This document shows, in pieces, positions 5,253 through 56,747 of a stretch of DNA of 64,000 bases. Below the pieces are notes generated by a model that was not told the DNA's origin, searched no databases, and saw only the letters and a list, made by a program, of their open reading frames with translations. The translations under genes and the position numbers were made by a program. Positions within the stretch are counted from its first letter, which is position 1. Each line of letters starts with the position of its first letter. The stretch lies in IMG/VR virus record IMGVR_UViG_3300034072_000926, positions 1 through 64,000 of that record; one strand, written 5' to 3'.

Positions 5253-5259
5253 ACATAGT

Positions 5260-5337: not shown

Positions 5338-5339
5338 GT

Positions 5340-5427: not shown

Positions 5428-5430
5428 GAG

Positions 5431-5503
5431 TGCAACAGGTGGGAATCGAACCCACTTCCTCCGATTTTCAGCCGGGTGCAATGACCACATTTGCTACCGT
5501 TGC
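5431..5503 (-). tRNA. tRNA-Phe(GAA), no CCA
   Basis: Loop CTGAAAA. Confidence 0.88.
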
Positions 5504-5504
5504 A

Positions 5505-5664: not shown

Positions 5665-5740
5665 TGGTGCGAAGTCAGGGAATCGAACCCTGTTAGCCGG
5701 CTTATGAGACCAGTGCGATGACCATCACCGCCCACCTCGC
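5665..5740 (-). tRNA. tRNA-CAT (Met or Ile2)
   Basis: CTGGT-CTCATAA-GCCGG, A73, CCA. Confidence 0.88.
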
Positions 5741-5752
5741 ATGAGGTATTTG

Positions 5753-5823
5753 CATCCCCTGTAGGAGTCGAACCCACGCTCTTGGACTTGGAAACCAATG
5801 TGCTACCGTAACACTTAGGAGAT
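5753..5823 (-). tRNA. tRNA-Trp(CCA), no CCA end
   Basis: A1-U72, G73, loop TTCCAAG. Confidence 0.8.
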
Positions 5824-5839
5824 ATATTGTCAATATTCG

Positions 5840-5911
5840 CAGGCCCCAGAGGATTCGAACCTCTACCAACGGCTTTGGATCACCGTCATGCCCCCTGTAC
5901 ATCAGAGGCCT
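5840..5911 (-). tRNA. Trp-like tRNA with 8-nt anticodon loop
   Basis: ACGGT-GATCCAAA-GCCGT; acceptor AGGCCTC/GGGGCCT, G73. Confidence 0.6.
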
Positions 5912-5918
5912 ATGTTTG

Positions 5919-5989
5919 TAGACCCAGAACGATTCGAACGTCCGCTGCTGGCTGTTCACACCAGTTTGCTACCGCTACAACACAGGTCC
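5919..5989 (-). tRNA. degenerate tRNA-Phe(GAA)-like
   Basis: Loop GTGAACA (G32, C37), wobble-rich acceptor. Confidence 0.55.
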
Positions 5990-5990
5990 G

Positions 5991-6063
5991 GCCCCACGCC
6001 GGGAATCGAACCCGAATCCACCAAGCGGAACTTGGTATGCTTAGCCTAACAATATCTAGGGGA
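5991..6063 (-). tRNA. degenerate tRNA (loop GTTCCGC)
   Basis: T-arm intact, mismatched acceptor, odd anticodon loop. Confidence 0.45.
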
Positions 6064-6144
6064 TGGTGGGAAGCAATGGATTCGAACCATTCCCGAAGAG
6101 CGGTTTTACAGACCGCCTGCTAGAGCCACTAGCTTTTACTTCCC
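6064..6144 (-). tRNA. tRNA-Tyr(GTA)
   Basis: GCGGT-CTGTAAA-ACCGC, CCA. Confidence 0.9.
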
Positions 6145-6207
6145 ATAGTAGTTGGCCAGGAAGCGATCGAGACTTCCTATTTCACTGCCGATCTGCAGAA
6201 CCATCAG

Positions 6208-6286
6208 AGCACGTAGGTGGAATCGAACCACTTACCGAAGGCTTAAAAGGCCCTTGCCGTTCCAAACGACTTTCGGCTCTACGTGC
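6208..6286 (-). tRNA. tRNA-Lys(TTT), enlarged D arm, no CCA
   Basis: AGGGC-CTTTTAA-GCCTT. Confidence 0.8.
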
Positions 6287-6287
6287 A

Positions 6288-6365
6288 TGGTCAGGGTGAA
6301 GGGACTCGAACCCCCACGATGTCCTCCTTCCAAAGGAGACGACTTACCAATTAGTCCACACCCTG
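6288..6365 (-). tRNA. tRNA-Pro(TGG)
   Basis: C1-G72, loop TTTGGAA, CCA. Confidence 0.92.
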
Positions 6366-6373
6366 ATGAATGT

Positions 6374-6447
6374 TGGTGCTTCCAGGAAGAATCGAACTTC
6401 CAATACCCGCTTATCAGGCGAGTGTTATACCATTTAACTATAGAAGC
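6374..6447 (-). tRNA. tRNA-Ile(GAT)
   Basis: CTCGC-CTGATAA-GCGGG, CCA. Confidence 0.92.
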
Positions 6448-6453
6448 ATGGTT

Positions 6454-6582
6454 GATGAGCAAGTGGTGAATTGGACCGTTTACTAGCCACCGCGACCAGG
6501 CCCATAATGGGCGGACCCGCCGAGAGTCGAACTCGGATCGTTTGATTTCAAGTCAAAGATAACCCAAATCTATCGGCTCATC
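6454..6582 (-). ncRNA. Y RNA-like (YrlA-type) copy 3
   Basis: GAUGAG-C-CGA...CUUG-CUCAUC; CCGA-N7-GGGUUAUC; T-arm CCGAG-UUCGACU-CUCGG; closed acceptor CGGGUCC/GGGCCUG. Confidence 0.8.
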
Positions 6583-6584
6583 AG

Positions 6585-6657
6585 TGCCTGTGGTGGGGGT
6601 CGAACCCACGCTGGATGCGTTCTGAACGCATTGCCTCTACCTTTGGGCTACACAGGC
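6585..6657 (-). tRNA. tRNA-Leu(CAG), short variable loop, no CCA
   Basis: ATGCG-TTCAGAA-CGCAT, A73. Confidence 0.88.
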
Positions 6658-6662
6658 GTGTT

Positions 6663-6739
6663 TGGTGTTCCCCGTGGGACTCGAACCCACAACATTCGGT
6701 ACCTAAAACCGACGACTCTACCAGTTGGCCTAGAGGAAC
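6663..6739 (-). tRNA. tRNA-Leu(TAG), short variable loop
   Basis: TCGGT-TTTAGGT-ACCGA, CCA. Confidence 0.88.
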
Positions 6740-6752
6740 ATAGTTGCTGACT

Positions 6753-6798
6753 AACAGCTTGAGCTGTTCAAAACAGCTTGAGCTGTTCAAAACAGCTT
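6753..6798. repeat. tandem palindromic 19-bp repeat (2.4 copies)
   Basis: AACAGCTTGAGCTGTTCAA x2 + AACAGCTT. Confidence 0.9.
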
Positions 6799-6874
6799 GG
6801 TGCTCTGAGTGGGACTCGAACCCACAACATCTGGAGTTTGAAACCAGCGACTCTACCAGTTGGCCTACCAGAGC
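6798..6874 (-). tRNA. tRNA-Leu(CAA), short variable loop
   Basis: Loop TTCAAAC, CCA. Confidence 0.88.
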
Positions 6875-6882
6875 ATAGTAGT

Positions 6883-40253: not shown

Positions 40254-40607
40254 TCAGGACCTCGCTAATTTGAACAAACTGTTGAACTGAAGAATAGCCT
40301 GACATATTGCATGTGGAAGAGTTGAGCCCTTACTCACAATGTTCACCCCGGCGATTTGGGGATGACTCACAGTCACACTGAACATAGATTCCTCACAGGG
40401 AGAGATCTTGAACGTGCAACCGTGAGTCTTAAACCTTGCAACCAGTTCATGCGCGGTCATTGTGTCAGTCGAGTATGGAGGAACAGGAATGAACTTCTTG
40501 TTCTTCACATCACGCAACTGATGCACACCGGTTTCAGTATCGAGGATAACCACAACACCGAGAACCTTTCGCGCAATCTCTGCATCAAGATCAGGTCCAG
40601 GAATCAT
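40254..40607 (-). CDS. phage ABA-sandwich-domain-like protein
   Basis: DLDAEIARKVLG...PPYSTD...AHELV. Confidence 0.6.
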   Translation of the reverse strand: MIPGPDLDAEIARKVLGVVVILDTETGVHQLRDVKNKKFIPVPPYSTDTMTAHELVARFKTHGCTFKISPCEESMFSVTVSHPQIAGVNIVSKGSTLPHAICQAILQFNSLFKLARS

Positions 40608-40870
40608 TAAGCAGGCTGCTGGCGCAGACGCTTCTTCTGACGACGAATCGCTTCCTGCTTCTTCTTGCGACGGATCTGACCCTTCGTCTCAACATATTCC
40701 TTGCGGCGCATGTCACGAATCAGACCTTCCTGCACGACGCGACGCTTCAGCGTCCTCATAGCAGAATCAAGATTCTTTAGAGCCTGTTCAGCAGTATGAG
40801 CAGGCTTCACATCGACCGTCAGTCCACGCTTGTGGATGTCACGACCATTGCCATTGTAATGTACTCCCAC
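40607..40870 (-). CDS. rpsU: ribosomal protein bS21
   Basis: NLDSAMRTLKRRV..EGLIRDMRRKEYVET.GQIRRKKKQEAIRR. Confidence 0.9.
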   Translation of the reverse strand: MGVHYNGNGRDIHKRGLTVDVKPAHTAEQALKNLDSAMRTLKRRVVQEGLIRDMRRKEYVETKGQIRRKKKQEAIRRQKKRLRQQPA

Positions 40871-41415: not shown

Positions 41416-41748
41416 ATGAAGACCATGAAGAGTATCAGCGTTCTGCTGGCTTTCGCTACACTCGCGGCCTGCGGACCCAAGAAGTTCGGCGAAGAGGTTC
41501 GTCAGGTCGAAGTGGGCCAGACATACGTGGATGAAGACATGGGCGAGCTCTACGTCGATATCAAGGACGTATCGAGCGGCCAGAACTGGAAGGTAGGATT
41601 GGGCGAAGAATGTCGCCAGTATCCACTTCCAATGGGCGAACGCTTCATGACGCGATTTGACAAGAGTCGCTATGAGGATAAGCCCGAGGACAAGAACATC
41701 TACTTCTCACCGCAGACGACTCCGATCTGGAACTACCTGTGCGGCTAA
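41416..41748 (+). CDS. putative lipoprotein
   Basis: LAFATLAAC lipobox. Confidence 0.75.
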   Translation: MKTMKSISVLLAFATLAACGPKKFGEEVRQVEVGQTYVDEDMGELYVDIKDVSSGQNWKVGLGEECRQYPLPMGERFMTRFDKSRYEDKPEDKNIYFSPQTTPIWNYLCG

Positions 41749-41755
41749 GTTGAAA

Positions 41756-42268
41756 TCACTTAGCTCTAAGGGCACTTCTTTTCTGTCTCGAAGGGGAGTG
41801 CCTTTTTTGTGACTTTTTGATTTGCGAAGCCGCTTGCTTCTTTCGAAGCTGCATTACCTTACAATCAGGCGCATACTTTTCTCGCAGTTCCCATATTGCA
41901 GCCTTGATCGCTTTGATTGAAGCAGGGGTCGAAACATAGCATTCAGTATAGCCCGAAAATCTAACTGATGGCGTGTAGCGAAACTGTTTCAATTTCGCGT
42001 GAAGTTCTTGTTCCACGTCAAATAGAAGCTTCCTGCTTTCTAGTTTCTGACTGGTCATCAGACTGAAATCGTATCGTTCAACAAACGCATCAGGAAACTT
42101 CGTAAATCTCTCCACGATTTTATCCTGACTGGTCATGCCAATCTTTATGAATTTCTCCACGACATAATTGAATGGAATCTCCTTGGACTCTTTCTTATAG
42201 GAGGCTTTGGATTTGGTTTTCACTCGATAGACATATAGTCGGTGAGTTCTGATTGGATTATTTGACAT
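41756..42268 (-). CDS. T5orf172/GIY-YIG-like endonuclease
   Basis: LYVY...FIKIGMT...ERF...EQELH.KLK..RY.P...F.GYTECY. Confidence 0.7.
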   Translation of the reverse strand: MSNNPIRTHRLYVYRVKTKSKASYKKESKEIPFNYVVEKFIKIGMTSQDKIVERFTKFPDAFVERYDFSLMTSQKLESRKLLFDVEQELHAKLKQFRYTPSVRFSGYTECYVSTPASIKAIKAAIWELREKYAPDCKVMQLRKKQAASQIKKSQKRHSPSRQKRSALRAK

Positions 42269-42273
42269 ATAAT

Positions 42274-42748
42274 AAGACCGGAATGAACGAACTTGTGAGC
42301 GAATGTATGACTTGCAGTAGGCATGAAAGCCACACCTTTATCCCCCGCTACAATAGATAGACATTAAAAATCTATATTGTAGTGAGGGAATCAGTGTCTT
42401 GCAGTTAGAGGCTGTCAGAGCACACCTTGAAACTGACACCATGTAAGCATGGCACCGGGGTCACGTTGTCGGTCTTAGGTCAGGAATCCTGGAATAGTGG
42501 CGGCGTCCTACCAGTCACATTTCAAGTTGCAATTGGTAGGCAGAAAGGTGGTCGGAGTGGACCAGAGCTTTCATCCTTGGGCTACTTGCGTTGTTTATAC
42601 TGGCGCCAGACGTAACCTTTTCAACTCTTTGCAGAGGAGGCCGCCACCCATGGGATGGTTCCTCACCATCCCTGATCTTCCAGTTTGCGCCTAGCCGCTA
42701 CCATTCCGTCTTCTTCCGGACAAGGTTGAGATAACACTAGGTTGTCGT
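42274..42748 (-). ncRNA. large pseudoknotted structured RNA, class unknown
   Basis: Closing helix AAGACGGAAUG/CAUUCC(G)GUCUU; long-range GGAUGAAAGC/GCUUUCAU(G)CC; crossing GUGGCGGC/GCCGCCAC; G-U wobbles favour minus strand; TAAATA upstream. Confidence 0.65.
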
Positions 42749-42810
42749 GTGCCTATTTAAAGGCTTGTCATTTTGGATAACGTACCGGACAACCCAGAGT
42801 CAATTACTCT

Positions 42811-43563
42811 TTACTTGTTGTTTGTATAGGGGGCCACTTTCCGAGCAAAGTCGGCGAAGTTTTTCATCTCCTTGACATTGAACGGGAGACGATAGATAGC
42901 GAGGGCTGCTCGTATCCCCATCACCGCTAGTTCGATATCAAGCGTTCCGAGCCACGTTATGAATCGGTCGCCCTGCTCATAAAAGATGATATTCGGCTTG
43001 CCGTATTTCTCGAGCGTTGCTTTGAGACCCTCGCACACTTCCTTGATAACACGACAGTTCTCTTCAAAGGTGTCCGCAGGACCCCGTGCTTGCCCGCTCA
43101 GAACAAGATCACCTGTTAGCTGTCCGCTGTCGAGATCAAGGTCAAGTTCTTCTATGAGGGCTTCTACATGCTCCTCATAGGTTGTGCCATCGAGGTAGAC
43201 AGTTGGCCAATGATAAGCCGTTATGTCCTTTGCAAAATGGACCGTGTATCCAGCTTTACCGCTGAAGATTCGTTCCTCGAGATGTGCGAGACGAACAGTA
43301 GTCTTATCATCGGCAAGCACTTCAAAGCCGCAATAGCGACGCAAATACTGCCACGCATAGACTTGCATGTCGAGATGCAGGCCGCCGATCCACAGAGCGA
43401 GGTTGTTGATACCGTCCTTGATGGCTTCGGGATTGCGTTTCCCATCAAGGTCATAGAAAATAATTGAGGCTTGGTGAATCAGTTCCATCTGAAAATCAGG
43501 ATGGAACGTCTCTTCTGGCCATTTGCCATCAAGAATCTGTTGGGCTATCTCTCGATTAGTCAT
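42811..43563 (-). CDS. hypothetical protein
   Basis: 250 aa, AGGAGG RBS. Confidence 0.8.
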   Translation of the reverse strand: MTNREIAQQILDGKWPEETFHPDFQMELIHQASIIFYDLDGKRNPEAIKDGINNLALWIGGLHLDMQVYAWQYLRRYCGFEVLADDKTTVRLAHLEERIFSGKAGYTVHFAKDITAYHWPTVYLDGTTYEEHVEALIEELDLDLDSGQLTGDLVLSGQARGPADTFEENCRVIKEVCEGLKATLEKYGKPNIIFYEQGDRFITWLGTLDIELAVMGIRAALAIYRLPFNVKEMKNFADFARKVAPYTNNK

Positions 43564-43568
43564 AAGAA

Positions 43569-43615
43569 ACCTCCTGTGCTACCTTTGCTTGTAACACAGG
43601 AGGTCTGTTTGTCAA
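43569..43615 (-). promoter_or_regulatory. promoter with inverted repeat pairing spacer with the RBS
   Basis: TTGACA...TACAAG; ACCTCCTGTG-N16-CACAGGAGGT. Confidence 0.75.
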
Positions 43616-43818
43616 CCCATTGTAGTGAATTCCATGCCGTGCCTTGTGCCGACATATGGGCGTCGCACATCAGTGCGATGCATATTCAATACAATATCAG
43701 TTCCCTTCAGTGCGACCCGAAGGCTCTTGTCTGATTTTCGGAGAATGTCTGCTTCTATCGTTTTGCCCGTATCAGTCGAGCTTACTGAGCAGGTCTCCGA
43801 ACATTGCTGTCGTGTCAT
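43612..43818 (-). CDS. hypothetical protein
   Basis: 68 aa ORF coupled to upstream gene. Confidence 0.6.
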   Translation of the reverse strand: MTRQQCSETCSVSSTDTGKTIEADILRKSDKSLRVALKGTDIVLNMHRTDVRRPYVGTRHGMEFTTMG

Positions 43819-44155: not shown

Positions 44156-44406
44156 AAGACACGCGGTCCCCCTTCACGCATTTCGACACGGATTTTGCTG
44201 GAGCGACCCGGCTTAAACCCACAGCGCCAACACCCTCTCAAAAGCGTCTTTGCTGTAAAGGGTAAGCTATGTGTTCACACCTTACACGTCAAGCGGAATA
44301 TGTAGCAGTAGTGTTGCAAAACCGTTGAATTTCTGCAACACAGTCTAATAAACCATTGATAGAACAATGGAATATTTTCAAACAACCGTTAATTATTTTG
44401 AACAAA

Positions 44407-44446
44407 AAGGGTTAACAGGGTCCTTTAGAAACACCTGTTAACCCTT
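44407..44446. terminator. 13-bp perfect inverted repeat downstream of infC
   Basis: AAGGGTTAACAGG-N14-CCTGTTAACCCTT with T-tract on minus side. Confidence 0.6.
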
Positions 44447-44499
44447 GGGGTTGTATGAAACTATAGATTCCTTGCCCGAGCAAGTAAATCTTAGTTAAT

Positions 44500-45030
44500 T
44501 TACGTAGTTTTCTTTGCCGCCGGCGCAACAATCGCAAAGAGCTGTCGCTCACTGCGGGCAACCGGGCGCTCAAACTTGAAATCTGTGAGGAATCCCAAGA
44601 AATCATTCATCACGCTGGCACCAACATCCAAGTGCGTGATTTCACGGCCCTTGAACTTGATGATGATCTTGACCTTGTCGCCTTCATCCAGGAAACCCTG
44701 TGCGCGCTTGGCCTTGACCTTGAGGTCATTCATGTCTGTGGTAGGGCGAAGCTGAATCTCTTTCAGTTCAACCCTCGACTCCCTGGACTTCTTGGCAGCT
44801 TCCTTTGCACGACGACTCTCGTCATACTTGAACTTGCCATAATCCAGGATTTTGCAGACTGGCATACCGTTAGCCATATTGATAGCTACGAGATCCAGGC
44901 CTACCTGACGGGCCCGGTTTCGAGCGTCGATCAGTGAAACTACACCAATCTGCTCACCAGTGTCAGCAATGAGACGTACTTCTTTTGCGCGGATCTGATC
45001 ATTCACCGCATACTTAAAATTCACAGACAA
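44500..45030 (-). CDS. infC: translation initiation factor IF-3
   Basis: NDQIRAKEVRLI...GLDLV...PVCKILDYGKFKY...KEIQLRP. Confidence 0.95.
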   Translation of the reverse strand: MSVNFKYAVNDQIRAKEVRLIADTGEQIGVVSLIDARNRARQVGLDLVAINMANGMPVCKILDYGKFKYDESRRAKEAAKKSRESRVELKEIQLRPTTDMNDLKVKAKRAQGFLDEGDKVKIIIKFKGREITHLDVGASVMNDFLGFLTDFKFERPVARSERQLFAIVAPAAKKTT

Positions 45031-45087: not shown

Positions 45088-46338
45088 TCAAGCTACTTTT
45101 GGGTTCTCGAAAACCACAACAGGCTCTGCTGTTCCTTCAATGACATCCTTCGTTACTCGGATGGTAACTGCGCCTTGATCCTTCAGATCAGGTAGGTCAT
45201 ATTGGACCTGGATGAGACGCTTCTCAATAACGCTCCTCAGACCACGCGCACCAGTCTTACGGGTAATAGCGTCGACCGCGACAGCCTTGAGTGCTTCGTC
45301 GTCAAATTCAAGCGAGATGTTCTCAAGCTGGAACATCTTAGAGAACTGCTTCACAAGTGCATTCTTTGGTTCAGTGAGAACACGAACCAACTGCTCCTGG
45401 TCTAGCTCTTCCAAGCTAGTGATAACCGGAAGACGACCCACTAGCTCTGGAATCAAACCGAACTTCTGAAGATCTTCTGGCTCTACGCTATTAAGCAATT
45501 TGCTTGAGACCTTGCTGTTGTCTCCCTTAACGGAAGCACCAAAGCCGATGCTACCCTTGCCCTTGTTCATACGCTTGCCGATGATTTCATCCAAGCCCAC
45601 GAATGCACCGCCAACAATGAACAGGATGTTCTTCGTATTCACTACGGCCATCTCTGCATTTGGATGCTTACGGTTACCCTGTAGGGGCACACGAACTTCA
45701 CTACCCTCGATAATCTTCAGCAAAGCTTGCTGAACACCCTCGCCTGACACGTCGCGGCTAATGGACGCGCTATCACCCCTACGGGCTTTCTTATCTACTT
45801 CGTCGAGGTAGATAATACCACGCTCGGCCTTCGCCACATCATTATCGCATACCTGGAGCAAGCGAGAGATGATGGTCTCAACGTCATCACCCACATAACC
45901 AGCCTCAGTCAGCGAAGTCGCGTCAGCAATTGTGAATGGAACGTCGAGCAACTTCGCGATGCTCTTGGCCATGAGGGTCTTACCAGAACCGGTTGGGCCG
46001 AGCAGAAGGATGTTGGACTTTTCAAGCTCAACATCGTCAACCACAGGATTGGCTAGACGCTTGTAGTGATTATGAACCGCAACTGCCATGACCATCTTGG
46101 CATCATTTTGACCAATCACATACTGGTCAAGAAACTCTCGGATTTGACGAGGGCTAGGAATCTCACCATCTTTGAGAGACATCTTGGTCTCTGCATTAGT
46201 GTCTTCCTTGAGGATGTCAGCACAAAGCTGGACACAGTCATTGCAGATAAAAACATCAGGTCCAGCAATCAGCTTCTGGACATGTTCTTGCTTCTTTCCG
46301 CAGAAGCTGCACGTTAGGGACTTTTTGTTCTCGCTCAT
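45088..46338 (-). CDS. clpX: ATP-dependent Clp protease ATP-binding subunit ClpX
   Basis: CSFCGK zinc finger, GPTGSGKT, IGF loop, RDVSGEGVQQALLK, TGARGLR. Confidence 0.97.
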   Translation of the reverse strand: MSENKKSLTCSFCGKKQEHVQKLIAGPDVFICNDCVQLCADILKEDTNAETKMSLKDGEIPSPRQIREFLDQYVIGQNDAKMVMAVAVHNHYKRLANPVVDDVELEKSNILLLGPTGSGKTLMAKSIAKLLDVPFTIADATSLTEAGYVGDDVETIISRLLQVCDNDVAKAERGIIYLDEVDKKARRGDSASISRDVSGEGVQQALLKIIEGSEVRVPLQGNRKHPNAEMAVVNTKNILFIVGGAFVGLDEIIGKRMNKGKGSIGFGASVKGDNSKVSSKLLNSVEPEDLQKFGLIPELVGRLPVITSLEELDQEQLVRVLTEPKNALVKQFSKMFQLENISLEFDDEALKAVAVDAITRKTGARGLRSVIEKRLIQVQYDLPDLKDQGAVTIRVTKDVIEGTAEPVVVFENPKVA

Positions 46339-48806: not shown

Positions 48807-48946
48807 AGCTGAGCTGCTCTTATGTGTATTTTCTCCTGCTCTGTCAATATCGTTTTACCAATCCGATAAATTAACCTGTATCCAATGTGAAAATTGACAC
48901 TTTGGGTTCCTAAAACATATTGTCAAACAAAGAACAAGGGTTAACC

Positions 48947-50818
48947 ATGTCCAACAACATTAAGAAACTAACAGATTACCAACACGCTCGCTTGAGGACA
49001 GAGATGTATCTGGGTTCGAGGTCACTCCATACTCAGAACGTCCTGCAATTCGTAGATGGCAAGCCACAGCCTGTTGAGACATCTTGGGTGCCTGCATTAT
49101 ATACAGCATTCCGTGAAGTTCTCGACAACGCACTCGATGAAGTAGTGGGTCACGGCCACGGCAGTCGCATTGATGTCACATATGATCCTAAGACTCGCGA
49201 GGTCAGTGTTCAGGACGATGGTCGTGGTATCCCTATCGCTTATGATGAATCGCATAAGTGTCACCTCGCAACGCTGGTTATGACTGAAGCTCGTGCTGGT
49301 CGTAACTTTGAAGAGCGCGGCGAAGTCGCGGGAACTAACGGTATCGGTGCATCGGTTGTGAACTTCTGCTCCGAATTTTTCCGTCTTGACATCCATAAGG
49401 ATGGCGAAAGGTTCCAGCAGGAATTCACACAGGGTAATGCAGTCTTTGGTGACGAACTACAGGTCGGAAAGCCGAAGATTGTAAAGAAGCAGAATAAGAA
49501 CGGAACAAAGATCACGTTCAAGCTGAGCGATGAAGTCTTCCCTGACTTGACTCTCCCTGAGGAGTTCATTCGTTCGCGCGTAACTGAGGTTGCAATCTGC
49601 AATCCATTGATCAAGATCTTCTACAATGGAGAACAGGTCAAGGTCAAGCCGCGACCTGAACAGAGCCTCTTCCCTGGCTTGAAGCCAATGGCCCTAGAAG
49701 TGAAGGAAGATACCTTCCGTAGCCGCTTCTGGATTGTGCCCAATTGGGTCAAGGACGGCGAGCATGTTCATACGATTGTTAACAATATTCCTGCCTTTAA
49801 CGGCGGTGTTCACATTGATATTTTCCGTCGTCTCTTTTATGGCAACCTGATCACGGCTCTAGAGAAGGAAAGCAAGCGTCGCAAGCTGACTCCTAACCGC
49901 TCAGATGTTACTGAAGGTGTTCTGATCTACAACATCACGAACATGAGGGCTCCGAACTTCGATAGTCAGTCCAAGACACGACTGATCAATGAAGAAGTTG
50001 GTAAGATCATCAAAAGCCAGCTAGAAGATCCTGAACTCTACAAGGAGTTCATTAAGAAGAACCGAGAGTGGATTGAGGAAATCTACAAGCGTTGTGCAGA
50101 ACGCACAATGAAGAAAGACCTCGGTGATCTCGCGAAGGCTGCAAAGAAGAATCTCCGCACCAAGGTTCCTGGACTGATGGATGCTATTGCGACTGATCGC
50201 ACATCTTGCATTCTCTTCCTCGCAGAAGGTGACTCGGCAATTTCGGGTATGAGCTCTGTTCGTAATCCTGAAATCCATGGTGGTCTTGCGCTTTCGGGTA
50301 AGGTGCTCAACGTCAATGGCGAAATGCCTAAGAAGGTCGTCGAGAACAAGGCTCTCGGTGAGATCATGAGCAGCATTGGTTTGGTCGTTGGACAGAAGGC
50401 CCATCGCGGTGCTCTGCGCTATGGCCAGGTATATGTCGCACATGACATGGATCCCGACGGTCTAAACATCGGTGCGCTTCTGATCAACTTCTTCCACACT
50501 TACTGGCCTGAGTTGTTTGCTGATCCAAAGAACCCGTTTGTTCATATCTTCCGCACCCCGTTCATCATTGCTGAAAAGGGTAAAGCTCGCAAATACTGGT
50601 ATGCTCATAACTACCAGGACTTCAAGCCAGAAGATTACAGCGGTTGGTCGATCACCCGTGCAAAGGGTCTCGGAACTCTCACCCGTGCCGATTGGGAATA
50701 CTCTCTGAAGAACCCAGAAGTCTACCCAATTGTGGATGATGGCAAGATGGGTGAGACTTTGGACCTGATCTTCAACGGCAAGCGTTCGGACGATCGCAAG
50801 ACCTGGATTGGCCTATAA
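48947..50818 (+). CDS. type II DNA topoisomerase ATPase/TOPRIM subunit (T4 gp39+60-like)
   Basis: EVLDNALDE, DDGRGIP, GTNGIG, AEGDSA, D.DPDG. Confidence 0.95.
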   Translation: MSNNIKKLTDYQHARLRTEMYLGSRSLHTQNVLQFVDGKPQPVETSWVPALYTAFREVLDNALDEVVGHGHGSRIDVTYDPKTREVSVQDDGRGIPIAYDESHKCHLATLVMTEARAGRNFEERGEVAGTNGIGASVVNFCSEFFRLDIHKDGERFQQEFTQGNAVFGDELQVGKPKIVKKQNKNGTKITFKLSDEVFPDLTLPEEFIRSRVTEVAICNPLIKIFYNGEQVKVKPRPEQSLFPGLKPMALEVKEDTFRSRFWIVPNWVKDGEHVHTIVNNIPAFNGGVHIDIFRRLFYGNLITALEKESKRRKLTPNRSDVTEGVLIYNITNMRAPNFDSQSKTRLINEEVGKIIKSQLEDPELYKEFIKKNREWIEEIYKRCAERTMKKDLGDLAKAAKKNLRTKVPGLMDAIATDRTSCILFLAEGDSAISGMSSVRNPEIHGGLALSGKVLNVNGEMPKKVVENKALGEIMSSIGLVVGQKAHRGALRYGQVYVAHDMDPDGLNIGALLINFFHTYWPELFADPKNPFVHIFRTPFIIAEKGKARKYWYAHNYQDFKPEDYSGWSITRAKGLGTLTRADWEYSLKNPEVYPIVDDGKMGETLDLIFNGKRSDDRKTWIGL

Positions 50819-51668: not shown

Positions 51669-52073
51669 ATGTACCACGGCAACAAACAATTCGACCTAGA
51701 GACAACAGCTAAATTCTGGCTACTTCAGATTCGTGGCATTCGTATCAGCTATTATGGCAAGGAAGGCTATTCTGCGATCGATTGGTGTACGGCAAATGTA
51801 AAGGGTCATTGGGGTTGGAACCATGAACCTGAACTGATCAAAAATAGTGATATCGTTAAGAACATTGACTATCATTTCACTGGCATCTGGCCCAAGGCCG
51901 AAGAAGATGATGAAACCAGAATGATGAACGCTATGGCTCGTCAATTACAGCAAGACATAGATGATGAAATTTTAGAGAAACTCGGGGTAAAGAGGATTCG
52001 TCCCTCAGGTTATTTCTGGTTCGATAACAATGACGACGCAATGCTGTTCAAGCTGACCTGGGGTGGTGAATGA
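51669..52073 (+). CDS. FKLxWGG-family small protein
   Basis: Ends DAMLFKLTWGGE. Confidence 0.8.
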   Translation: MYHGNKQFDLETTAKFWLLQIRGIRISYYGKEGYSAIDWCTANVKGHWGWNHEPELIKNSDIVKNIDYHFTGIWPKAEEDDETRMMNAMARQLQQDIDDEILEKLGVKRIRPSGYFWFDNNDDAMLFKLTWGGE

Positions 52074-52360
52074 AGGATTACGATTTCGTCACAGTTTATC
52101 TCCCCTATGTTGGTGCAGTTGCCCGTGGAGAGTATAGCCACTTGATCTCTGAGGAAGTGGTTGCATGGCTCAATGAACACGTAGGCAACGGCACCGTTTC
52201 ATATCGTCACTGGTTGCTCAACTACGACAATGACACCTACCAGTGGACCTATAAGGGAACTGATTACTCCTCTGAATCTCATCATACAAAGATAGTCAGA
52301 GCATTCTGCTTCAAAGACATAGACAAAGCCAGCCTATTCAAATTGGTATGGGGTGGATAA
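52070..52360 (+). CDS. FKLxWGG-family small protein
   Basis: Ends KASLFKLVWGG. Confidence 0.8.
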   Translation: MKDYDFVTVYLPYVGAVARGEYSHLISEEVVAWLNEHVGNGTVSYRHWLLNYDNDTYQWTYKGTDYSSESHHTKIVRAFCFKDIDKASLFKLVWGG

Positions 52361-52368
52361 GTAGATTT

Positions 52369-52806
52369 ATGCAATCTACTCGTGCCAAATATCTAACAGA
52401 ATATCGTGCTTTACGAAATGCAATTCACCGTTGTCATAACAGCAAGAATAAGCAATATAAAGACTATGGCGGACGAGGTATAACCGTCTTTGATGAATGG
52501 CATACTGATTTTGACGCATTTATAAAACATATAGGACCTAAGCCTAGTCCTGATTTGACCTTAGAACGTATAGATAATGATAAGGGATATGAGCCTAATA
52601 ATGTTACATGGGCGACTAGGTCTGAGCAGCAATACAACAGAAGATCACATAGTTCAGCGGCCCGAATTACAATCAACGGGCAATCTTATACCTTGAATGA
52701 ATGGTCAAAGATAAGTGGAATAAATGCCACTACTTTACGATCAAGATTAAATAAAGGTGTAAGCCAATCTGAATTACTAAATCCAGTTGGTAAAACTGGA
52801 GTTTAG
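52369..52806 (+). CDS. HNH homing endonuclease
   Basis: RC.N...K.YKDYGGRGITV..EW..DF..F....TLERIDNDKGYEP.NV.WAT..EQ..NR; AT-rich. Confidence 0.9.
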   Translation: MQSTRAKYLTEYRALRNAIHRCHNSKNKQYKDYGGRGITVFDEWHTDFDAFIKHIGPKPSPDLTLERIDNDKGYEPNNVTWATRSEQQYNRRSHSSAARITINGQSYTLNEWSKISGINATTLRSRLNKGVSQSELLNPVGKTGV

Positions 52807-52807
52807 A

Positions 52808-53104
52808 ATGAAAGTAGCATATAACTTCCTACCTGATTACCAATTCCCTCATTGGATAGATCACAGCACAACACCTGCTAGTGACAACCTCACTCACTTC
52901 ATGAATGTCAACGAATGGTGCGGCAAGCAATTCGGGGACCTTGGTGTGAATTGGGGTTATGAGCGCAAGACTGATACCTCATCTGCGCCGAACGGGATGA
53001 ACCCTGTCAGGGTGCGTCTGCATTATACCACAATTCATTACAGCTGGCGTTTCAAGAACAAGGAAGATGCTGCTTTGTTCAAACTCACGTGGGGTGGCGC
53101 GTGA
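52808..53104 (+). CDS. FKLxWGG-family small protein
   Basis: Ends DAALFKLTWGGA. Confidence 0.8.
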   Translation: MKVAYNFLPDYQFPHWIDHSTTPASDNLTHFMNVNEWCGKQFGDLGVNWGYERKTDTSSAPNGMNPVRVRLHYTTIHYSWRFKNKEDAALFKLTWGGA

Positions 53105-53403
53105 AGCTTACAGAATACGAAACAGTCTCGATCTATGTTCCAGAGAGTCGACGACTAGGCTCGGGTAGCGGACAGAGCTTTAAGCTCAACCCTGACCTTA
53201 TTGAATGGGCTGATATGATGTACGGCTACAAGGCTCCCGACATGACTTACTTCGTTGCCAACCTTGACAATGATGCTTATGGTTGGGCGCATGGTGGTAT
53301 GGCAGCTAGTCCTAATCCTCTCGATAATCGCCTCTATCGCAAGTTCATGTTCAAGAAGGAATCTGATGCCTTGATGTTCAAATTGACATGGGGTGGCAAT
53401 TGA
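53101..53403 (+). CDS. FKLxWGG-family small protein
   Basis: Ends DALMFKLTWGGN. Confidence 0.8.
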   Translation: MKLTEYETVSIYVPESRRLGSGSGQSFKLNPDLIEWADMMYGYKAPDMTYFVANLDNDAYGWAHGGMAASPNPLDNRLYRKFMFKKESDALMFKLTWGGN

Positions 53404-53684
53404 GTGGATATCAGATCAGGTTCAATATCGAGGACATCTACGAGATTCAAGAACATTTCGGCTTAACGTGGGAATGTCTGACCGTCGGAATGCGTCGAGA
53501 GCATGAAAAGGAATGGATATTAAATCTCACCAGAGTTATTGACGCGTTAACTCAATGGTGTAAGGATAACGGTATAAGGCAATACTGGTTTGGCTACACT
53601 CAGATCGAATTGTGCGTAACCTTTCAAGAGAAGAAGGACGCGATGCTATTCAAGTTGAGGTGGCATAATGGTAAGAGAAGTTGA
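53400..53684 (+). CDS. FKLxWGG-family small protein
   Basis: DAMLFKLRW near C-terminus. Confidence 0.75.
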   Translation: MSGYQIRFNIEDIYEIQEHFGLTWECLTVGMRREHEKEWILNLTRVIDALTQWCKDNGIRQYWFGYTQIELCVTFQEKKDAMLFKLRWHNGKRS

Positions 53685-53871
53685 GACAGGATATGTGGGA
53701 TTCAACCCACCAGTCTATCACAAGTCTGATCGGTATTATCGAATTTGGGAGATCATTGACGAAATGAATCTCCGTCGTACGGTTGCCTTCATGTATCAAG
53801 GCAATATGGAATTGGTAGGGCTAGGCTTCCCTACGAAACAAGAAGCAATGATTTTCAGGTTGAAACTATAA
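53668..53871 (+). CDS. FKLxWGG-family small protein (divergent)
   Basis: Ends EAMIFRLKL. Confidence 0.7.
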   Translation: MVREVETGYVGFNPPVYHKSDRYYRIWEIIDEMNLRRTVAFMYQGNMELVGLGFPTKQEAMIFRLKL

Positions 53872-54122
53872 TGGGAACAGTTCACAGAAACGGCATACCG
53901 CCCAAGCGTCTTCCTTTCAAGAAGGTCCAAACCTATTCCGATATGGAGTTCAATGAAGAACTCATCACGAAATGGGCAAGGGAACAACTGGAGAACCACA
54001 TGCAATATGACATCGTGGTCTTCAATGGCACGAAAGGGAAGCTCAACCGTTCTATTGAGTTCACAGCCTGGTTTCAGACTAAGATTGATGCTGAACGCTT
54101 CCAGAAGAAATGGATGAAGTGA
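53871..54122 (+). CDS. FKLxWGG-family small protein (divergent)
   Basis: Ends DAERFQKKWMK. Confidence 0.7.
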   Translation: MGTVHRNGIPPKRLPFKKVQTYSDMEFNEELITKWAREQLENHMQYDIVVFNGTKGKLNRSIEFTAWFQTKIDAERFQKKWMK

Positions 54123-54415
54123 ACAATCAGATCTACATTGTTGATCGCGTGGATCAGGTCAAGTGGTATATCGACGAAGAGACTGCGATGACCTTCTGTC
54201 TACAGATGGATAAGAATCATCGAGTCATCCGAAACTGGCTAATGGAAATGACCTCCAACACCGTGGTCATAAGTGGTCAGGGCGTCATGCCTCGTATGGG
54301 ATCGAGTGATCATCCCAACAATGTCTACCAATCCATTTCCCGTGACCAATTCAAACTCTATTTCGCAGACGCAGACGATGCAATGCTGTTCAAACTAACT
54401 TGGGGTGGCGAATGA
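54110..54415 (+). CDS. FKLxWGG-family small protein
   Basis: Ends DAMLFKLTWGGE. Confidence 0.8.
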   Translation: MDEVNNQIYIVDRVDQVKWYIDEETAMTFCLQMDKNHRVIRNWLMEMTSNTVVISGQGVMPRMGSSDHPNNVYQSISRDQFKLYFADADDAMLFKLTWGGE

Positions 54416-54594
54416 CCACGTGCAAACTCTACAAGGCTTATCTCCTTAGCGATCGTGTCGAGGGTCCTAATATTCTGACTTTCTATGCCTACCACATGAG
54501 TGAGAAAGCAGCCAAGCAGGCTGCTATTCGTTGGGCTCAAGGTCAACATCCTGGCGCAAGCATCACCCTCGATAAAGTTGACTTGCTCTCATAA
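54412..54594 (+). CDS. hypothetical protein
   Basis: ATGA overlap; lacks the family motif. Confidence 0.6.
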   Translation: MTTCKLYKAYLLSDRVEGPNILTFYAYHMSEKAAKQAAIRWAQGQHPGASITLDKVDLLS

Positions 54595-54611
54595 CTCACT
54601 ATTATGGGCTT

Positions 54612-54968
54612 ATGAAAATAAGCTTCTGTCCTTGGCGTTCCCTGTCGCACCCTTACAGGGTCCAGTGGGGCTCTGTCTATGATTTAGTAACGCAGCAAAG
54701 CTCTGGTCCTAGAAGTTCTGAGGACTTCGCTCTGCGCGCCGCATGGGTTATTCGTTCTGAGGTTCTCAAATACATCGAAGAGTTACCTGATAGGAAATTC
54801 TTGTTCTTCTTTAAGATCAAGCCTATGGCGGCTGTGGCTTGTCAAGAGGCACGGTATATCGCAGGTCGTGCTGGACGAGTAACAGCCTTCCCTATACCTA
54901 AGCCTTTAATGTTCGCTCGCAAGAGTGACATTATGATGTTTAAGCTTCGTTTCGGCGGTCGTCTGTAA
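54612..54968 (+). CDS. FKLxWGG-family small protein
   Basis: Ends DIMMFKLRFGGRL. Confidence 0.75.
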   Translation: MKISFCPWRSLSHPYRVQWGSVYDLVTQQSSGPRSSEDFALRAAWVIRSEVLKYIEELPDRKFLFFFKIKPMAAVACQEARYIAGRAGRVTAFPIPKPLMFARKSDIMMFKLRFGGRL

Positions 54969-55333
54969 TGGAATTGTCTGCTAGGGGATTACCGTCGCTT
55001 CGCATTACTCAGGGATACCATGTCGTGATTCGTGCCCCTGATTATCCAGGCTTACTTCCGCATCAAGAACGTTTCAAACATGGGTTCACAAATGAACTCA
55101 AAGATTGGCTCTTAGAGCATGTGGGTCAACCTGCGACAAATCTCACATGGGAAAATGGCGAGGGCGATTGGATTCATACTGGCTGCCGTCAAGGCAAAGT
55201 AGAATGGGTTAATGCCCATACCCCTTCGGTCATCAACAGCATGGACTTCTATTTTAGAGACCGGCGTCGAGCGAGACGTTTCAAGATAGTCTGGGAACGC
55301 TATTTTGAGATAGCACTGGGACCTTTCACCTAA
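54968..55333 (+). CDS. FKLxWGG-family small protein (divergent)
   Basis: FYF....RARRFKIVW. Confidence 0.7.
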   Translation: MELSARGLPSLRITQGYHVVIRAPDYPGLLPHQERFKHGFTNELKDWLLEHVGQPATNLTWENGEGDWIHTGCRQGKVEWVNAHTPSVINSMDFYFRDRRRARRFKIVWERYFEIALGPFT

Positions 55334-55391: not shown

Positions 55392-56747
55392 ATGACCCAA
55401 AATAGCTCAAATTATATCCTAGACACATCTCGCGAATATTCTATCTACGTATGTGAATCCCGTGCAATTCCTAAGGTCACAGACGGCCTAAAGGATGCTC
55501 AGCGCAAAGCGCTCTGGCTCGTTAAGAGCAAAGCCGAAAAGATCAAGACCGTATCGTTGGCTGGTGAAATGATCTCCAGCGGACTATATCTGCACGGCGA
55601 CGCATCTGCCGCCGGTGCTATCTCGATGTTGGCTGCACCCTATGTCAATAACGTCCCGCTCCTTGATGGTATTGGTTCGTTTGGCACTCGTGTTGCGCCC
55701 GTTGATGGCATTGGTGCTCCTCGCTATACCTATGTGAAGCGTGGTAAGGCTGCGCTAGAACTCATGTTCCCAGACATGGACATCGTCCCCGTAAAGGAGA
55801 ACTACGATGGATCTACCATCGAGCCTCAGCATTTTCTTCCACTTATTCCCACGGTTCTGCTCAACGGAGTCAGTGGCATCGCTGTTGGTTGGAGTACTGA
55901 AATTCTACCCCGTAGCTTCAAGAGCCTCATTGATGCTACCATAGCAATTCTTGATGGGAAGACGATCAAGCGTATCCCTCCCAGCTACGAACTCTACAAT
56001 GTTGGTGTGAAGCACCTTGAGGAGAACTCTTGGGAGTTCACTGGTAAGTTGGAGATCGTTGATACCTCGACGATCAAGATCACTGAGCTACCTCCTGAAC
56101 TGACCCTTGAGAAGTTCAAGGAACGACTCAATACATATGAGGACGAGAACCGAATCTCGACCTATACCGACCGTTCCACTGACACCATCGACATCACGAT
56201 CAAGATGGCACGTGGCACTGTTAAGGGCTGGTCGGAATCTCGCGCAATCGAATACTTCAAGCTGAAGCAGAAGAAGAGCGAGCGTATTGTTGTCATCGAC
56301 TGGAACAACACATCTATCCGTCAGTATGAGAACGCTGAACAGCTAGTCAAGGACTTTGTTGCTTGGCGTTTGGAATGGTATAAGACCCGCTACGAACACA
56401 AGCTGACCAAGGATGATTACGAGCTTGGTTTCTGGAAAGGTGTTAAGGCTTGCTTCGATGACAAGCTTCCTGCTCGTTTGGGTTCGATCAAGAGTCGTGC
56501 TGATCTAGATGCTGATGTTCGTGTGGTTGCAGAAGCCAAGAAGGTCATCTTGGATGACAAGCGTATTGATCGCATTGTCAACTTGCCAGCACATCGTTGG
56601 ACCAAAGATGCTTACGCAGATGTGTTGGCTAAGATCAAGGAACTCGAAGCTAACATCAAGGATTACAAGGCCATTTTGAAGGACCCTGAGAGGCGCAAGT
56701 CGATCTATAGGGAAGAGCTAGAAACTCTCAAGAAGGTTAAGTTCTAA
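55392..56747 (+). CDS. type II DNA topoisomerase breakage-reunion subunit (T4 gp52-like)
   Basis: RAIP...DGLK..QRK, YLHGDAS, GAPRY active-site Tyr, LLNG.SGIAVGW.T. Confidence 0.95.
   Translation: MTQNSSNYILDTSREYSIYVCESRAIPKVTDGLKDAQRKALWLVKSKAEKIKTVSLAGEMISSGLYLHGDASAAGAISMLAAPYVNNVPLLDGIGSFGTRVAPVDGIGAPRYTYVKRGKAALELMFPDMDIVPVKENYDGSTIEPQHFLPLIPTVLLNGVSGIAVGWSTEILPRSFKSLIDATIAILDGKTIKRIPPSYELYNVGVKHLEENSWEFTGKLEIVDTSTIKITELPPELTLEKFKERLNTYEDENRISTYTDRSTDTIDITIKMARGTVKGWSESRAIEYFKLKQKKSERIVVIDWNNTSIRQYENAEQLVKDFVAWRLEWYKTRYEHKLTKDDYELGFWKGVKACFDDKLPARLGSIKSRADLDADVRVVAEAKKVILDDKRIDRIVNLPAHRWTKDAYADVLAKIKELEANIKDYKAILKDPERRKSIYREELETLKKVKF

What the first reader, a model, noticed from the sequence alone, without database searches (positions are those of the whole stretch)
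42274..42748. ~440-nt ornate, pseudoknotted RNA abutting an RBS-less nuclease gene
Seen: a non-coding gap closed by AAGACGGAAUG (42712-42702) pairing with CAUUCC(G)GUCUU (42285-42274). Nested long-range helices are GCA(A)GUAG/CUACUGC, GGAUGAAAGC/GCUUUCAU(G)CC (42576-42567 with 42330-42320) and CACCUUU/AAAGGUG. GUGGCGGC (42647-42640) pairs with GCCGCCAC (42504-42497) across them, forming a pseudoknot, and there are several local hairpins. A late-type TAAATA sits at 42754-42759. The closing helix ends 5 nt before the ATG of a T5orf172/GIY-YIG-like ORF that has no visible SD. I could not find group I (P7) or group II (DV) signatures, tmRNA or RNase P motifs. Inference: a new large ncRNA class (GOLLD/ROOL-like in size and context), or an RNA partner or structured leader of the nuclease.
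Basis: partly seen in the sequence, partly recalled or inferred. Interest (0 to 1): 0.78.

Follow-up and report, generated by a model that had tools for sequence, protein, structure and literature searches.

The report
New large pseudoknotted RNA of megaphages
The 540-base gap holds a real, transcribed, roughly 500-nt non-coding RNA gene with at least three pseudoknots, found so far only in uncultivated giant phages and matching no known RNA family; the nuclease gene next to it is a later insertion and not its partner.

Summary
The gap at 42269-42810 (minus strand) is the largest non-tRNA gap in a 64-kb piece of a 465-kb megaphage. It encodes a conserved structured RNA. I found 16 distinct homologues, all on uncultivated phage contigs and none in 185,579 bacterial or archaeal genomes. 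No Rfam 15 family matches, even with permissive thresholds.

Covariation strongly supports a fold. In the 3' domain 94% of cells pair and 27 of 46 pairs show compensatory changes (0 of 500 shuffles reach this).

The supported fold has about 11 helices and three pseudoknots. One is a 7-bp pairing between a hairpin loop and a single strand. Two repeated modules end in ACUGCAAG and change in parallel.

The T5orf172 gene occurs only in this genome. It is a roughly 520-bp insertion placed just after the RNA. The RNA also sits in a second phage lineage that shares no neighbouring protein, so it is an autonomous gene.

Wastewater metatranscriptome contigs cover the RNA but not the upstream gene. Function is unknown. 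The best guess is a trans-acting scaffold or ribozyme-like RNA.

The parts
42274..42803 (-). Whole conserved RNA gene: from the TTGAC...ACGTTAT block just after the stop codon of the upstream gene, to the end of the conserved 3' tail. Exact transcript ends are not determined.
   Evidence: nhmmer finds full-length homologues in 15 other loci. Alignment A2. Homology with L005 ends at 42276. Metatranscriptome contigs cover up to about 42749-42761.
42777..42803 (-). Conserved TTGAC-N-TACGTTAT block enclosing a variable hairpin (P0, 42797-42785). It is either a promoter with a dyad operator or the first hairpin of the RNA.
   Evidence: Invariant in lineage 1. The inner stem changes with compensation. 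The motif is unique in the window. The sigma-70 scan does not call it.
42751..42764 (-). P1 hairpin, GCCU-UUAAAU-AGGC.
   Evidence: The stem differs with compensation among homologues (GCCU/AGGC, GUCC/GGAC, GCCG/CGGC, GCCA/UGGC). Three sequences keep the hairpin but lack TAAATA.
42690..42741 (-). P2 (42741-36 with 42695-90) enclosing the P3 hairpin (42720-17 with 42708-05, invariant loop GAAGAAGA, outer CC/GG 42725-24 with 42702-01).
   Evidence: the count of structure pairs on A6: 94.2% paired, 0 of 500 shuffles reach this. P3 pair is U-A in 9, C-G in 4, U-G in 1.
42687..42698 (-). Pseudoknot PK-A: GCX (42698-96) pairs with YGC (42689-87) across the 3' strand of P2.
   Evidence: The X-Y pair is G-C in 6, C-G in 4, U-A in 2 and other in 2.
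42599..42684 (-). P4 (ACUGG 42684-80 with CCAGU 42603-599) closing a variable domain. This domain's size defines three architectural subtypes.
   Evidence: Segment comparison shows both strands are invariant, so the pairing is compatible but has no covariation.
42591..42598 (-). Conserved single-stranded AUAAACAA.
   Evidence: Present in all 16 sequences as CAG(U/G/C)AUAAA(C/G)A.
42543..42572 (-). P5 hairpin (GAAAG...CUUUC, with inner stem UGGUC/GACCA).
Evidence: Top covarying column pairs: 357/385 is AU in 3, UA in 7, CG in 2, GC in 1; 367/377 is UA in 6, CG in 5, AU in 3.
42507..42540 (-). P6 hairpin (13 column pairs). Its 8-nt loop carries the 5' strand of PK-B.
   Evidence: 10 of 13 pairs show compensatory changes.
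42426..42526 (-). Pseudoknot PK-B: P6 loop CUUGAAA (42526-20) pairs with UUUCAAG (42432-26).
   Evidence: 7 bp, 100% paired in 14 sequences. Three positions have compensatory changes, such as CUUGGAA/UUCCAAG and UUUGAAG/CUUCAAA.
42462..42499 (-). Pseudoknot PK-C: CAC (42499-97) pairs with GUG (42464-62) in the conserved 11-nt loop of P8.
   Evidence: Variants are CAC/GUG, CGC/GCG, UAC/GUA and CAU/AUG.
42433..42483 (-). Three-way junction: P7 (42483-79 with 42437-33), P8 (42473-70 with 42457-54) and P9 (42453-48 with 42443-38).
   Evidence: All three helices are 99-100% paired, with 9 compensatory pairs in total.
42398..42428 (-). Module m1: AAGGUGUG...GCCUCUAACUGCAAG.
   Evidence: It is a direct repeat of m2. 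Both change together: U to A within ACUGCAAG in L007 and L040, and GCCU/ACCU as G,G in 6 and A,A in 8 sequences.
42340..42391 (-). P10 long hairpin (UUCCCUC...GGGGGAU base, variable tip).
   Evidence: Base of the stem is 89.8% paired, with 3 compensatory pairs.
42311..42339 (-). Module m2: AAAGGUGUG...GCCUACUGCAAG.
   Evidence: As for m1.
42274..42310 (-). Pyrimidine-rich 3' tail with two UUCG(C/U)UCA-like repeats and CAUUCC, the complement of GGAAUG in P3.
   Evidence: Conserved across both phage lineages. Pairing with P3 is significant only in some sequences.
41756..42268 (-). T5orf172 / GIY-YIG-like endonuclease ORF. It is a genome-specific insertion and not part of the RNA family.
   Evidence: Pfam and PHROG hits. 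Absent from all 15 other loci. Flanking homology stops at 42276 and resumes at 41748.

Best explanation
The gap encodes an autonomous, trans-acting, highly structured non-coding RNA of about 450-530 nt, read from the minus strand. It belongs to a previously undescribed family carried by uncultivated giant phages.

Shown:
- It is conserved as RNA structure, not as protein.
- It folds into about 11 helices locked together by at least three pseudoknots.
- It keeps invariant purine-rich single strands (the GAAGAAGA loop, AUAAACAA, the ACA..GACC loop).
- It has two repeated modules ending in ACUGCAAG.
- It moves between phage lineages as a unit without any fixed protein neighbour.
- It is present in RNA libraries.

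Inferred:
- The pseudoknotted core is a rigid scaffold.
- The two modules vary in parallel rather than in a complementary way. I read them as two equivalent docking sites for the same partner, either two copies or a dimer of a protein or RNA, rather than sites that pair with each other.
- In the megaphage lineage the gene sits inside a translation cluster (ClpX, IF3, RNA, bS21) in a genome with 43 tRNA genes, so the partner may belong to the translation apparatus.

The T5orf172 endonuclease is a free-standing homing-endonuclease-like gene that landed behind the RNA gene. It probably uses read-through transcription from the RNA.

The confidence of 0.8 is for the identity claim: a real, independent, structured ncRNA gene of a new family. 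The specific scaffold-with-two-docking-sites mechanism I put at about 0.3.
For: - Conservation: nhmmer finds full-length matches (E from 1e-27 to 1e-105) in relatives whose flanking protein gp250 is only 25-54% identical.
- Covariation, 3' domain: 94.3% of cells paired, 27 of 46 pairs compensatory, 0 of 500 shuffles as good, slid controls 36-45% paired.
- Covariation, 5' domain: 94.2% paired, 0 of 500 shuffles.
- Many G-U pairs fix the strand as minus. Fold z-scores are -4.8 on minus and -2.8 on plus.
- Non-coding: (only spurious ORFs over the RNA match between lineages).
- No known family: Rfam at gathering and E-value thresholds on the window and five homologous loci; ARAGORN.
- Distribution: 11 IMG/VR contigs and 11 metagenome contigs, which overlap and give 16 distinct sequences, and 0 hits in two scans of 185,579 genomes.
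- Autonomy: in a second lineage (L040, L042, L043, L048) no protein within 5 kb resembles any window protein. The two upstream proteins are unrelated (hhalign probability 0.1%).
- The RNA similarity matrix is incongruent with genome context: L007 groups with lineage 2, and L043 groups with the window.
- Expression: metatranscriptome contigs X4 and X5 cover 41532-42761 at 99-100% identity, with none over 42815-43720 in X4.
- Parallel module changes.
Against: - No function, partner or activity is shown.
- Transcript ends are not mapped. The RNA-library evidence is low-depth assembled contigs without strand information, and DNA carry-over cannot be fully excluded.
- Only about 14 non-redundant sequences in three or four clades are available, so some helices (P4, P0, tail pairing) rest on invariant bases.
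- Parallel change of the two modules could also come from short-tract gene conversion between the repeats.
- The link to translation is only neighbourhood in one lineage. Lineage 2 lacks it, and no tRNA genes lie near the RNA there.
Confidence: 0.8

Rival explanations
1. RNA partner or structured 5' leader of the adjacent T5orf172 nuclease.
For: The ORF starts 5 nt after the conserved tail and has no SD. One metatranscriptome contig (42019-42333) spans the junction.
Against: The ORF is absent from 15 of 16 loci that carry the RNA. It is a clean roughly 520-bp insertion. The RNA is therefore conserved without it.
Confidence: 0.03
2. Self-assembling RNA-only multimer, like the ROOL/GOLLD cages. 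Some covarying 'pseudoknots' (PK-B, PK-C) or the near-palindromic ACUGCAAG modules would then be intermolecular contacts.
For: It is similar in size and in phage origin. Covariation cannot tell intra- from intermolecular pairing. A 7-bp pairing that uses 7 of the 8 nucleotides of a hairpin loop is sterically easier between molecules. ROOL, GOLLD and OLE were shown to form RNA-only complexes (bioRxiv 10.1101/2024.12.08.627333).
Against: There is no homology to ROOL or GOLLD. The U-to-A double change would break an m1:m2 duplex. No experiment exists.
Confidence: 0.15
3. A ribozyme or self-processing RNA. The two ACUGCAAG sites would be equivalent processing or docking sites recognised by the same active centre.
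For: The dense pseudoknotted core and invariant unpaired purines are typical of catalytic RNAs. Conservation drops soon after the second ACUGCAAG. The two sites co-vary in parallel.
Against: No known ribozyme family matches. Read contigs run through both sites. No cleavage evidence exists.
Confidence: 0.12
4. Cis-regulatory leader, for example an autoregulatory rRNA mimic, of the downstream bS21 operon.
For: In lineage 1 the next same-strand gene is always the bS21 homologue. In L007 it follows after about 230 nt.
Against: In most genomes opposite-strand genes lie between the RNA and bS21. In the window 1.4 kb and three genes intervene. Lineage 2 has no bS21 within 5 kb. About 500 nt with three pseudoknots far exceeds known r-protein leaders.
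Confidence: 0.05
5. Group I or group II intron, RNase P RNA, tmRNA, or an IscB/TnpB guide RNA too divergent for Rfam.
For: The size fits, pseudoknots are present, and a GIY-YIG-type endonuclease lies next to it in the window.
Against: No covariance-model hit at E up to 10. There is no downstream exon on the same strand, and the upstream ORF ends in a conserved stop. The helix order does not fit P3-P9 of group I or P1-P4 of RNase P. No tRNA-like domain is present. No IscB, TnpB or RT gene lies nearby.
Confidence: 0.03

Closest known systems
ROOL (RF03087) and GOLLD (RF01998) large ornate RNAs
   Same: Large (several hundred nt), intricately folded non-coding RNAs with multiple pseudoknots. They are carried by phages or prophages, are transcribed as independent genes and have no known biochemical function.
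   Different: No sequence or structure homology (no cmscan hit even at E = 10). This RNA is not adjacent to the tRNA array, which lies 32 kb away in the window. It is restricted to uncultivated giant-phage contigs and absent from 185,579 cellular genomes. Its multimeric state is unknown.
phi29 pRNA (packaging RNA)
   Same: A phage-encoded structured RNA that acts in trans. Its function depends on covarying loop-loop pairings.
   Different: pRNA is about 120-170 nt, sits at the genome end and works on the packaging motor. There is no similarity in sequence, size or location.
T-box leader RNAs
   Same: A possible analogy only. A displayed triplet followed by a purine (UGC-A, changed to AGC-A in both modules of two members) would resemble a specifier that reads a tRNA anticodon.
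   Different: No T-box model hit. There is no terminator/antiterminator and no downstream regulated gene. This is an untested idea.
Free-standing GIY-YIG / T5orf172 homing endonuclease genes of T4-like phages (for the neighbouring ORF)
   Same: A small endonuclease ORF inserted in an intergenic spot between conserved genes, present in one genome and absent from close relatives.
   Different: Its target site and activity are not known. It lacks an SD and abuts an RNA gene.

Membership tests
GOLLD / ROOL / OLE / raiA / HEARO (Rfam large ncRNAs) | Match to the family covariance model | tested here: not met
   cmscan against Rfam 15 found nothing at gathering score on the window. With permissive filters there was nothing better than E = 2 for unrelated small families on 42100-42900, and nothing on five homologous loci.
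GOLLD / ROOL | Forms RNA-only multimeric cage | not testable with these tools
   Needs native gel or cryo-EM.
Group I intron | Interrupts a gene, with exons on both sides on the same strand | tested here: not met
   The upstream ORF ends in a stop 8 nt before the element in the window, and likewise in relatives. Downstream genes are on the opposite strand or variable.
Group I intron | P3-P8 / P7 core with G-binding site | tested here: not met
   No hit to any group I model. The covariation-supported helix order does not fit.
Group II intron | Domain V and usually an RT/maturase ORF | tested here: not met
   No model hit and no RT in the flanks.
RNase P RNA | P4 pseudoknot with CR-I/CR-V, and a P1 closing 5'/3' helix | tested here: not met
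   No model hit. The CCGG-containing segment that superficially resembles CR-V forms a local covarying hairpin, P8. The closing helix is not conserved.
tmRNA | tRNA-like domain plus tag ORF | tested here: not met
   ARAGORN finds no tmRNA in the region or in the whole window. No conserved ORF.
IscB/TnpB omega RNA, IS110 bridge RNA | Adjacent gene for the cognate nuclease or recombinase | tested here: not met
   Flanking proteins in both lineages have no such Pfam or PHROG domains. The upstream proteins of the two lineages are unrelated.
Riboswitch / r-protein leader (cis-regulator) | Conserved regulated gene directly downstream on the same strand | tested here: not met
   The downstream neighbour is variable and mostly on the opposite strand. 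The context differs in lineage 2.
T5orf172 (GIY-YIG superfamily) endonuclease, for the neighbouring ORF | Match to PF10544 above the curated cut-off | tested here: met
   22.6 bits against a cut-off of 20, E = 1.6e-4. PHROG 681 endonuclease, E = 6e-10.

The most novel reading that the evidence does not exclude
The RNA is a new natural RNA machine of giant phages. It would be either a ribozyme or a self-assembling RNA particle. Its two co-varying ACUGCAAG modules would be equivalent docking or processing sites, for example specifier-like triplets that capture two tRNAs (UGC to AGC in both modules at once). It would act on the translation apparatus together with the phage's IF3, bS21 and 43 tRNAs.
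Probability: 0.12. Interest if true: 0.95.

Novelty: categorically new. Interest (0 to 1): 0.8.

Why it matters
Large, intricately folded non-coding RNAs are rare. Nearly every one whose function has been worked out, such as the ribosome, RNase P and self-splicing introns, turned out to be a major molecular machine. The few without a known function (OLE, GOLLD, ROOL) are active research targets and have recently given unprecedented RNA-only structures.

This candidate has unusually clean comparative support for its size: three covarying pseudoknots from only about 14 sequences. It is expressed in environmental RNA, is exchanged between unrelated giant phages as a stand-alone gene, and sits among phage-encoded translation factors. 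It is directly testable by in vitro transcription, chemical probing and cryo-EM.

It may also show what giant phages do with RNA beyond tRNAs. Finally, the case shows that single-sequence helix spotting can get the existence of a structure right and its details wrong.

Tried and rejected
- Rfam at gathering and at E up to 10 on the window, and at E up to 1 on five homologous loci: no family.
- blastn against 50,697 GenBank phages: no match.
- Single-protein locus searches with the two flanking ORFs: only the window's own contig. Homologues were reached through ClpX and IF3 synteny instead.
- A first short DNA pattern gave mostly chance hits.
The closing helix was retested by duplex energy against shuffled tails and was significant only in a few sequences.
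- An m1:m2 duplex proposed by RNAalifold was rejected, because the coordinated U-to-A changes would create two A-A mismatches. No third column co-varies with those Us.
- TAAATA as a late promoter: the hexamer is not enriched, and it lies in the loop of a covarying hairpin.
- TTGAC...CGTTAT as a recurrent promoter: unique in the window.
- A covariance model of P6-P9 found no extra copy in the window and nothing in six loci of more distant IF3-encoding giant phages.
- Upstream proteins as RNA partners: the two lineages' proteins are unrelated. They have no PDB sequence match. The gp250 model is all-helical without a fold match. The model of the lineage-2 protein was too poor to use. Atlas searches were uninformative.
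- Targets complementary to ACUGCAAG in the window: not enriched.
- Literature searches found no description of such an RNA.

Full report
**Where the window comes from.** The flanking ORFs match only contig IMGVR_UViG_3300034072_000926, a 465-kb uncultivated phage. The window carries 43 tRNA genes. It also carries ClpX, IF3, a ribosomal protein bS21 homologue and T4-type topoisomerase II. A greedy ORF map shows a compact genome. In it, 42269-42810 is the largest gap that is not filled by tRNAs.

- The gap is non-coding. The longest stop-free stretches differ in frame and strand among homologues, and substitutions show no 3-periodicity.
- The minus strand folds at -186 kcal/mol, with z = -4.8 against dinucleotide shuffles. 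The plus strand gives z = -2.8.
- Rfam 15 gives only tRNAs in the window at gathering score. In sensitive mode on 42100-42900 it gives nothing better than E = 2, and only to unrelated small families. It gives nothing on five homologous loci.
- ARAGORN finds no tRNA or tmRNA in the region.
- The neighbouring ORF, 41756-42268, matches T5orf172 (PF10544) and a PHROG endonuclease family.
- The descriptive part of the finding therefore holds.

**Homologues.**
- GenBank phages hold nothing similar.
- Using ClpX and IF3 as synteny anchors I fetched related giant-phage contigs.
- nhmmer then found the gap sequence, full length, in seven other genomes (E from 1e-27 to 1e-105).
- A three-block DNA pattern that matches all eight genomes found 11 metagenome contigs. 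It found none in one genome for each of 185,579 bacterial and archaeal species.
- A relaxed pattern gave 11 IMG/VR contigs and again no cellular genome.
- After removing duplicates there are 16 distinct sequences, aligned as A2.
- A covariance model of the best-conserved part found no second copy in the window. It also found nothing in six loci from more distant IF3-encoding giant phages.

**Genomic context.**
- In 12 loci the order is ClpX, IF3, gp127, gp68, gp250, RNA, then variable and mostly opposite-strand genes, then bS21, gp117 and a fibre-like protein.
- gp250 is only 25-54% identical among these genomes, while the RNA aligns end to end.
- The T5orf172 ORF is present only in the window. 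Homology with L005 runs to 42276 and homology with L008 resumes at 41748. The ORF is therefore a roughly 520-bp insertion between the RNA and a convergent lipoprotein-like gene.
- Four other members (L040, L042, L043, L048) lie in a different phage context: a PD-(D/E)XK endonuclease, an unknown 275-aa protein, the RNA, an unknown protein, RNase H, baseplate and a tape-measure-like protein.
- None of their proteins resembles anything in the window or in lineage 1.
- The two upstream proteins are unrelated (hhalign probability 0.1%).
- The RNA identity matrix is incongruent with context. L007, in lineage-1 synteny, groups with L042/L048/L040. L043, in lineage-2 context, groups with the window, L005 and L008.
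- The RNA is therefore a stand-alone gene that is exchanged between phages.

**Structure: three subtypes.** The family has three architectural subtypes. They differ in a variable domain before, and an extra domain after, the conserved CAGUAUAAACA segment.

**Structure: 3' domain (alignment A5).**
- I tested a model with P6, P7, P8, P9, the base of P10 and two pseudoknots.
- 94.3% of cells pair, and 27 of 46 pairs carry compensatory changes. No shuffle out of 500 reaches this on four of the five measures; on the fifth, 2 of 500 do. Sliding the partners by 1-3 columns drops pairing to 36-45%.
- PK-B joins the loop of P6 (CUUGAAA, 42526-42520) to UUUCAAG (42432-42426). It is paired in every sequence and has compensatory changes at three positions.
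- PK-C joins CAC (42499-42497) to GUG in the conserved loop of P8 (42464-42462). Its variants are CGC/GCG, UAC/GUA and CAU/AUG.

**Structure: 5' domain (alignment A6).**
- P2, P3 and PK-A pair in 94.2% of cells, and 0 of 500 shuffles reach the observed pairing or covariation score.
- The P3 pair switches from U-A to C-G.
- The PK-A pair takes G-C, C-G and U-A.
- P5 and P6 supply the highest APC-corrected mutual-information pairs in the whole alignment.

**Structure: strand.** Frequent G-U pairs fix the transcribed strand as minus.

- Placed on the 16-sequence alignment, his five long-range helices pair in 57.4% of cells, and 105 of 500 shuffles do as well.
- GGAUGAAAGC/GCUUUCAUGCC competes with the covarying local P5.
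- GUGGCGGC/GCCGCCAC loses two pairs already in L005. Part of GCCGCCAC is instead used in PK-C.
- The closing helix overlaps the covarying P3. A CAUUCC-like complement of GGAAUG does recur in the tails, but duplex energy beats shuffled tails clearly only in the window, L049 and L048. I leave that contact open.
- TAAATA sits in the loop of P1. The P1 stem changes with compensation, and three members keep the hairpin without the motif. The hexamer is not enriched in the window.

**An unexplained feature: two modules that change in parallel.**
- Two direct-repeat modules, m1 (42428-42398) and m2 (42339-42311), share the form AAGGUGUG...GCCU..ACUGCAAG.
- They change in parallel. Both carry ACAGCAAG in L007 and L040. 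Both switch between GCCU and ACCU (G,G in 6 sequences, A,A in 8). Both carry GGUAU in L009 and GAUCU in L042.
- RNAalifold would pair the two near-palindromic ends, but the double U-to-A change would break that duplex. No third column follows those changes.
- Equivalent contacts with one kind of partner fit the pattern. Gene conversion between the repeats also fits.

**Expression.**
- Near-identical sequence occurs in soil and subsurface DNA runs and in several wastewater RNA libraries.
- In metatranscriptome X4, contigs tile 41532-42749, with nothing over 42815-43720, which is the upstream gene. In X5, contigs cover 41975-42761.
- Variant contigs that diverge outside the conserved blocks show that relatives are present too.
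- One contig, 42019-42333, crosses from the RNA into T5orf172.
- Depths are low, contigs have no strand, and ends are not mapped. This supports transcription but does not prove it.

**Interpretation.**
- The evidence establishes a new family of large, pseudoknotted, phage-borne non-coding RNA.
- It does not establish a function.
- I favour a trans-acting scaffold that presents two equivalent sites on a rigid core, possibly aimed at the translation apparatus, given its neighbours in the megaphage lineage.
- A self-assembling RNA particle and a ribozyme are the main rivals.
- A leader or partner of the nuclease, a leader of bS21, and divergent members of known large RNA families are each contradicted by tests done here.
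- Literature searches found no earlier description.

Noticed in passing
window 447-10309: An array of 43 tRNA genes by ARAGORN (35 by Rfam), almost all on the minus strand. It covers most amino acids, including Cys(GCA) and Ser(GCU). One call has an abnormal 2-nt anticodon (5839-5911), and a lone plus-strand tRNA-Leu call (2338-2421) abuts a minus-strand tRNA-Asp.
   Followed up: partly
window 40607-40870 (-), 44500-45030 (-), 45088-46338 (-): Phage-encoded translation and proteostasis genes flank the RNA: a bS21 homologue (PHROG ribosomal protein S21), IF3 (TTG start) and ClpX. The order ClpX, IF3, ..., RNA, ..., bS21 is conserved in 12 related loci.
   Followed up: partly
L007, L043 versus window, L005, L008, L042, L048, L040: RNA similarity is incongruent with genome context. 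L007 (ClpX synteny) carries an RNA closest to the lineage-2 contigs. L043 (lineage-2 context) carries a 3' domain closest to the window's. This suggests horizontal exchange of the RNA gene or of its domains.
   Followed up: partly
L008:11680-11800 and the equivalent stretch in L007, L043, L042, L048, L040: Type-3 members carry an extra domain of about 80 nt after CAGUAUAAACA. It has a hairpin loop GGGGAAA complementary to a downstream UUUCCCC, which is a possible fourth pseudoknot. A covarying hairpin (CUGxGGG...CCCxCAG) competes with it.
   Followed up: no
window 48920-50818 (+) and 55392-56747 (+): The two T4-type topoisomerase II subunit genes are separated by about 4.5 kb of fourteen short, tightly overlapping ORFs (51669-55333).
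   Followed up: no
window 44156-44499: A 344-nt gap lies between IF3 and the next gene downstream (gp127). It is the second-largest non-tRNA gap near the finding and was not examined for RNA structure or promoters.
   Followed up: no
window 42274-42310 and the tails of the homologues: The 3' tails contain tandem UUCG(C/U)UCA-like repeats. L007 and L010 have three or four copies of CGCUCAGUCGCUUCG-like units. The meaning is unknown.
   Followed up: no
window 42461-42473 / alignment A5 columns 73 and 86: A position in the P7/P8 junction and a position in the P8 loop co-vary as C,A in 4 sequences and U,G in 10. This is the pattern of an isosteric wobble pair and hints at a further tertiary contact next to PK-C.
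   Followed up: partly
L040:3900-3926 and the equivalent stretch in L042, L043, L048: Lineage-2 members share a conserved motif, TCTACTTTATAGCCC, about 85 nt upstream of the RNA core, in place of the TTGAC...ACGTTAT block of lineage 1. It may be a different promoter.
   Followed up: no
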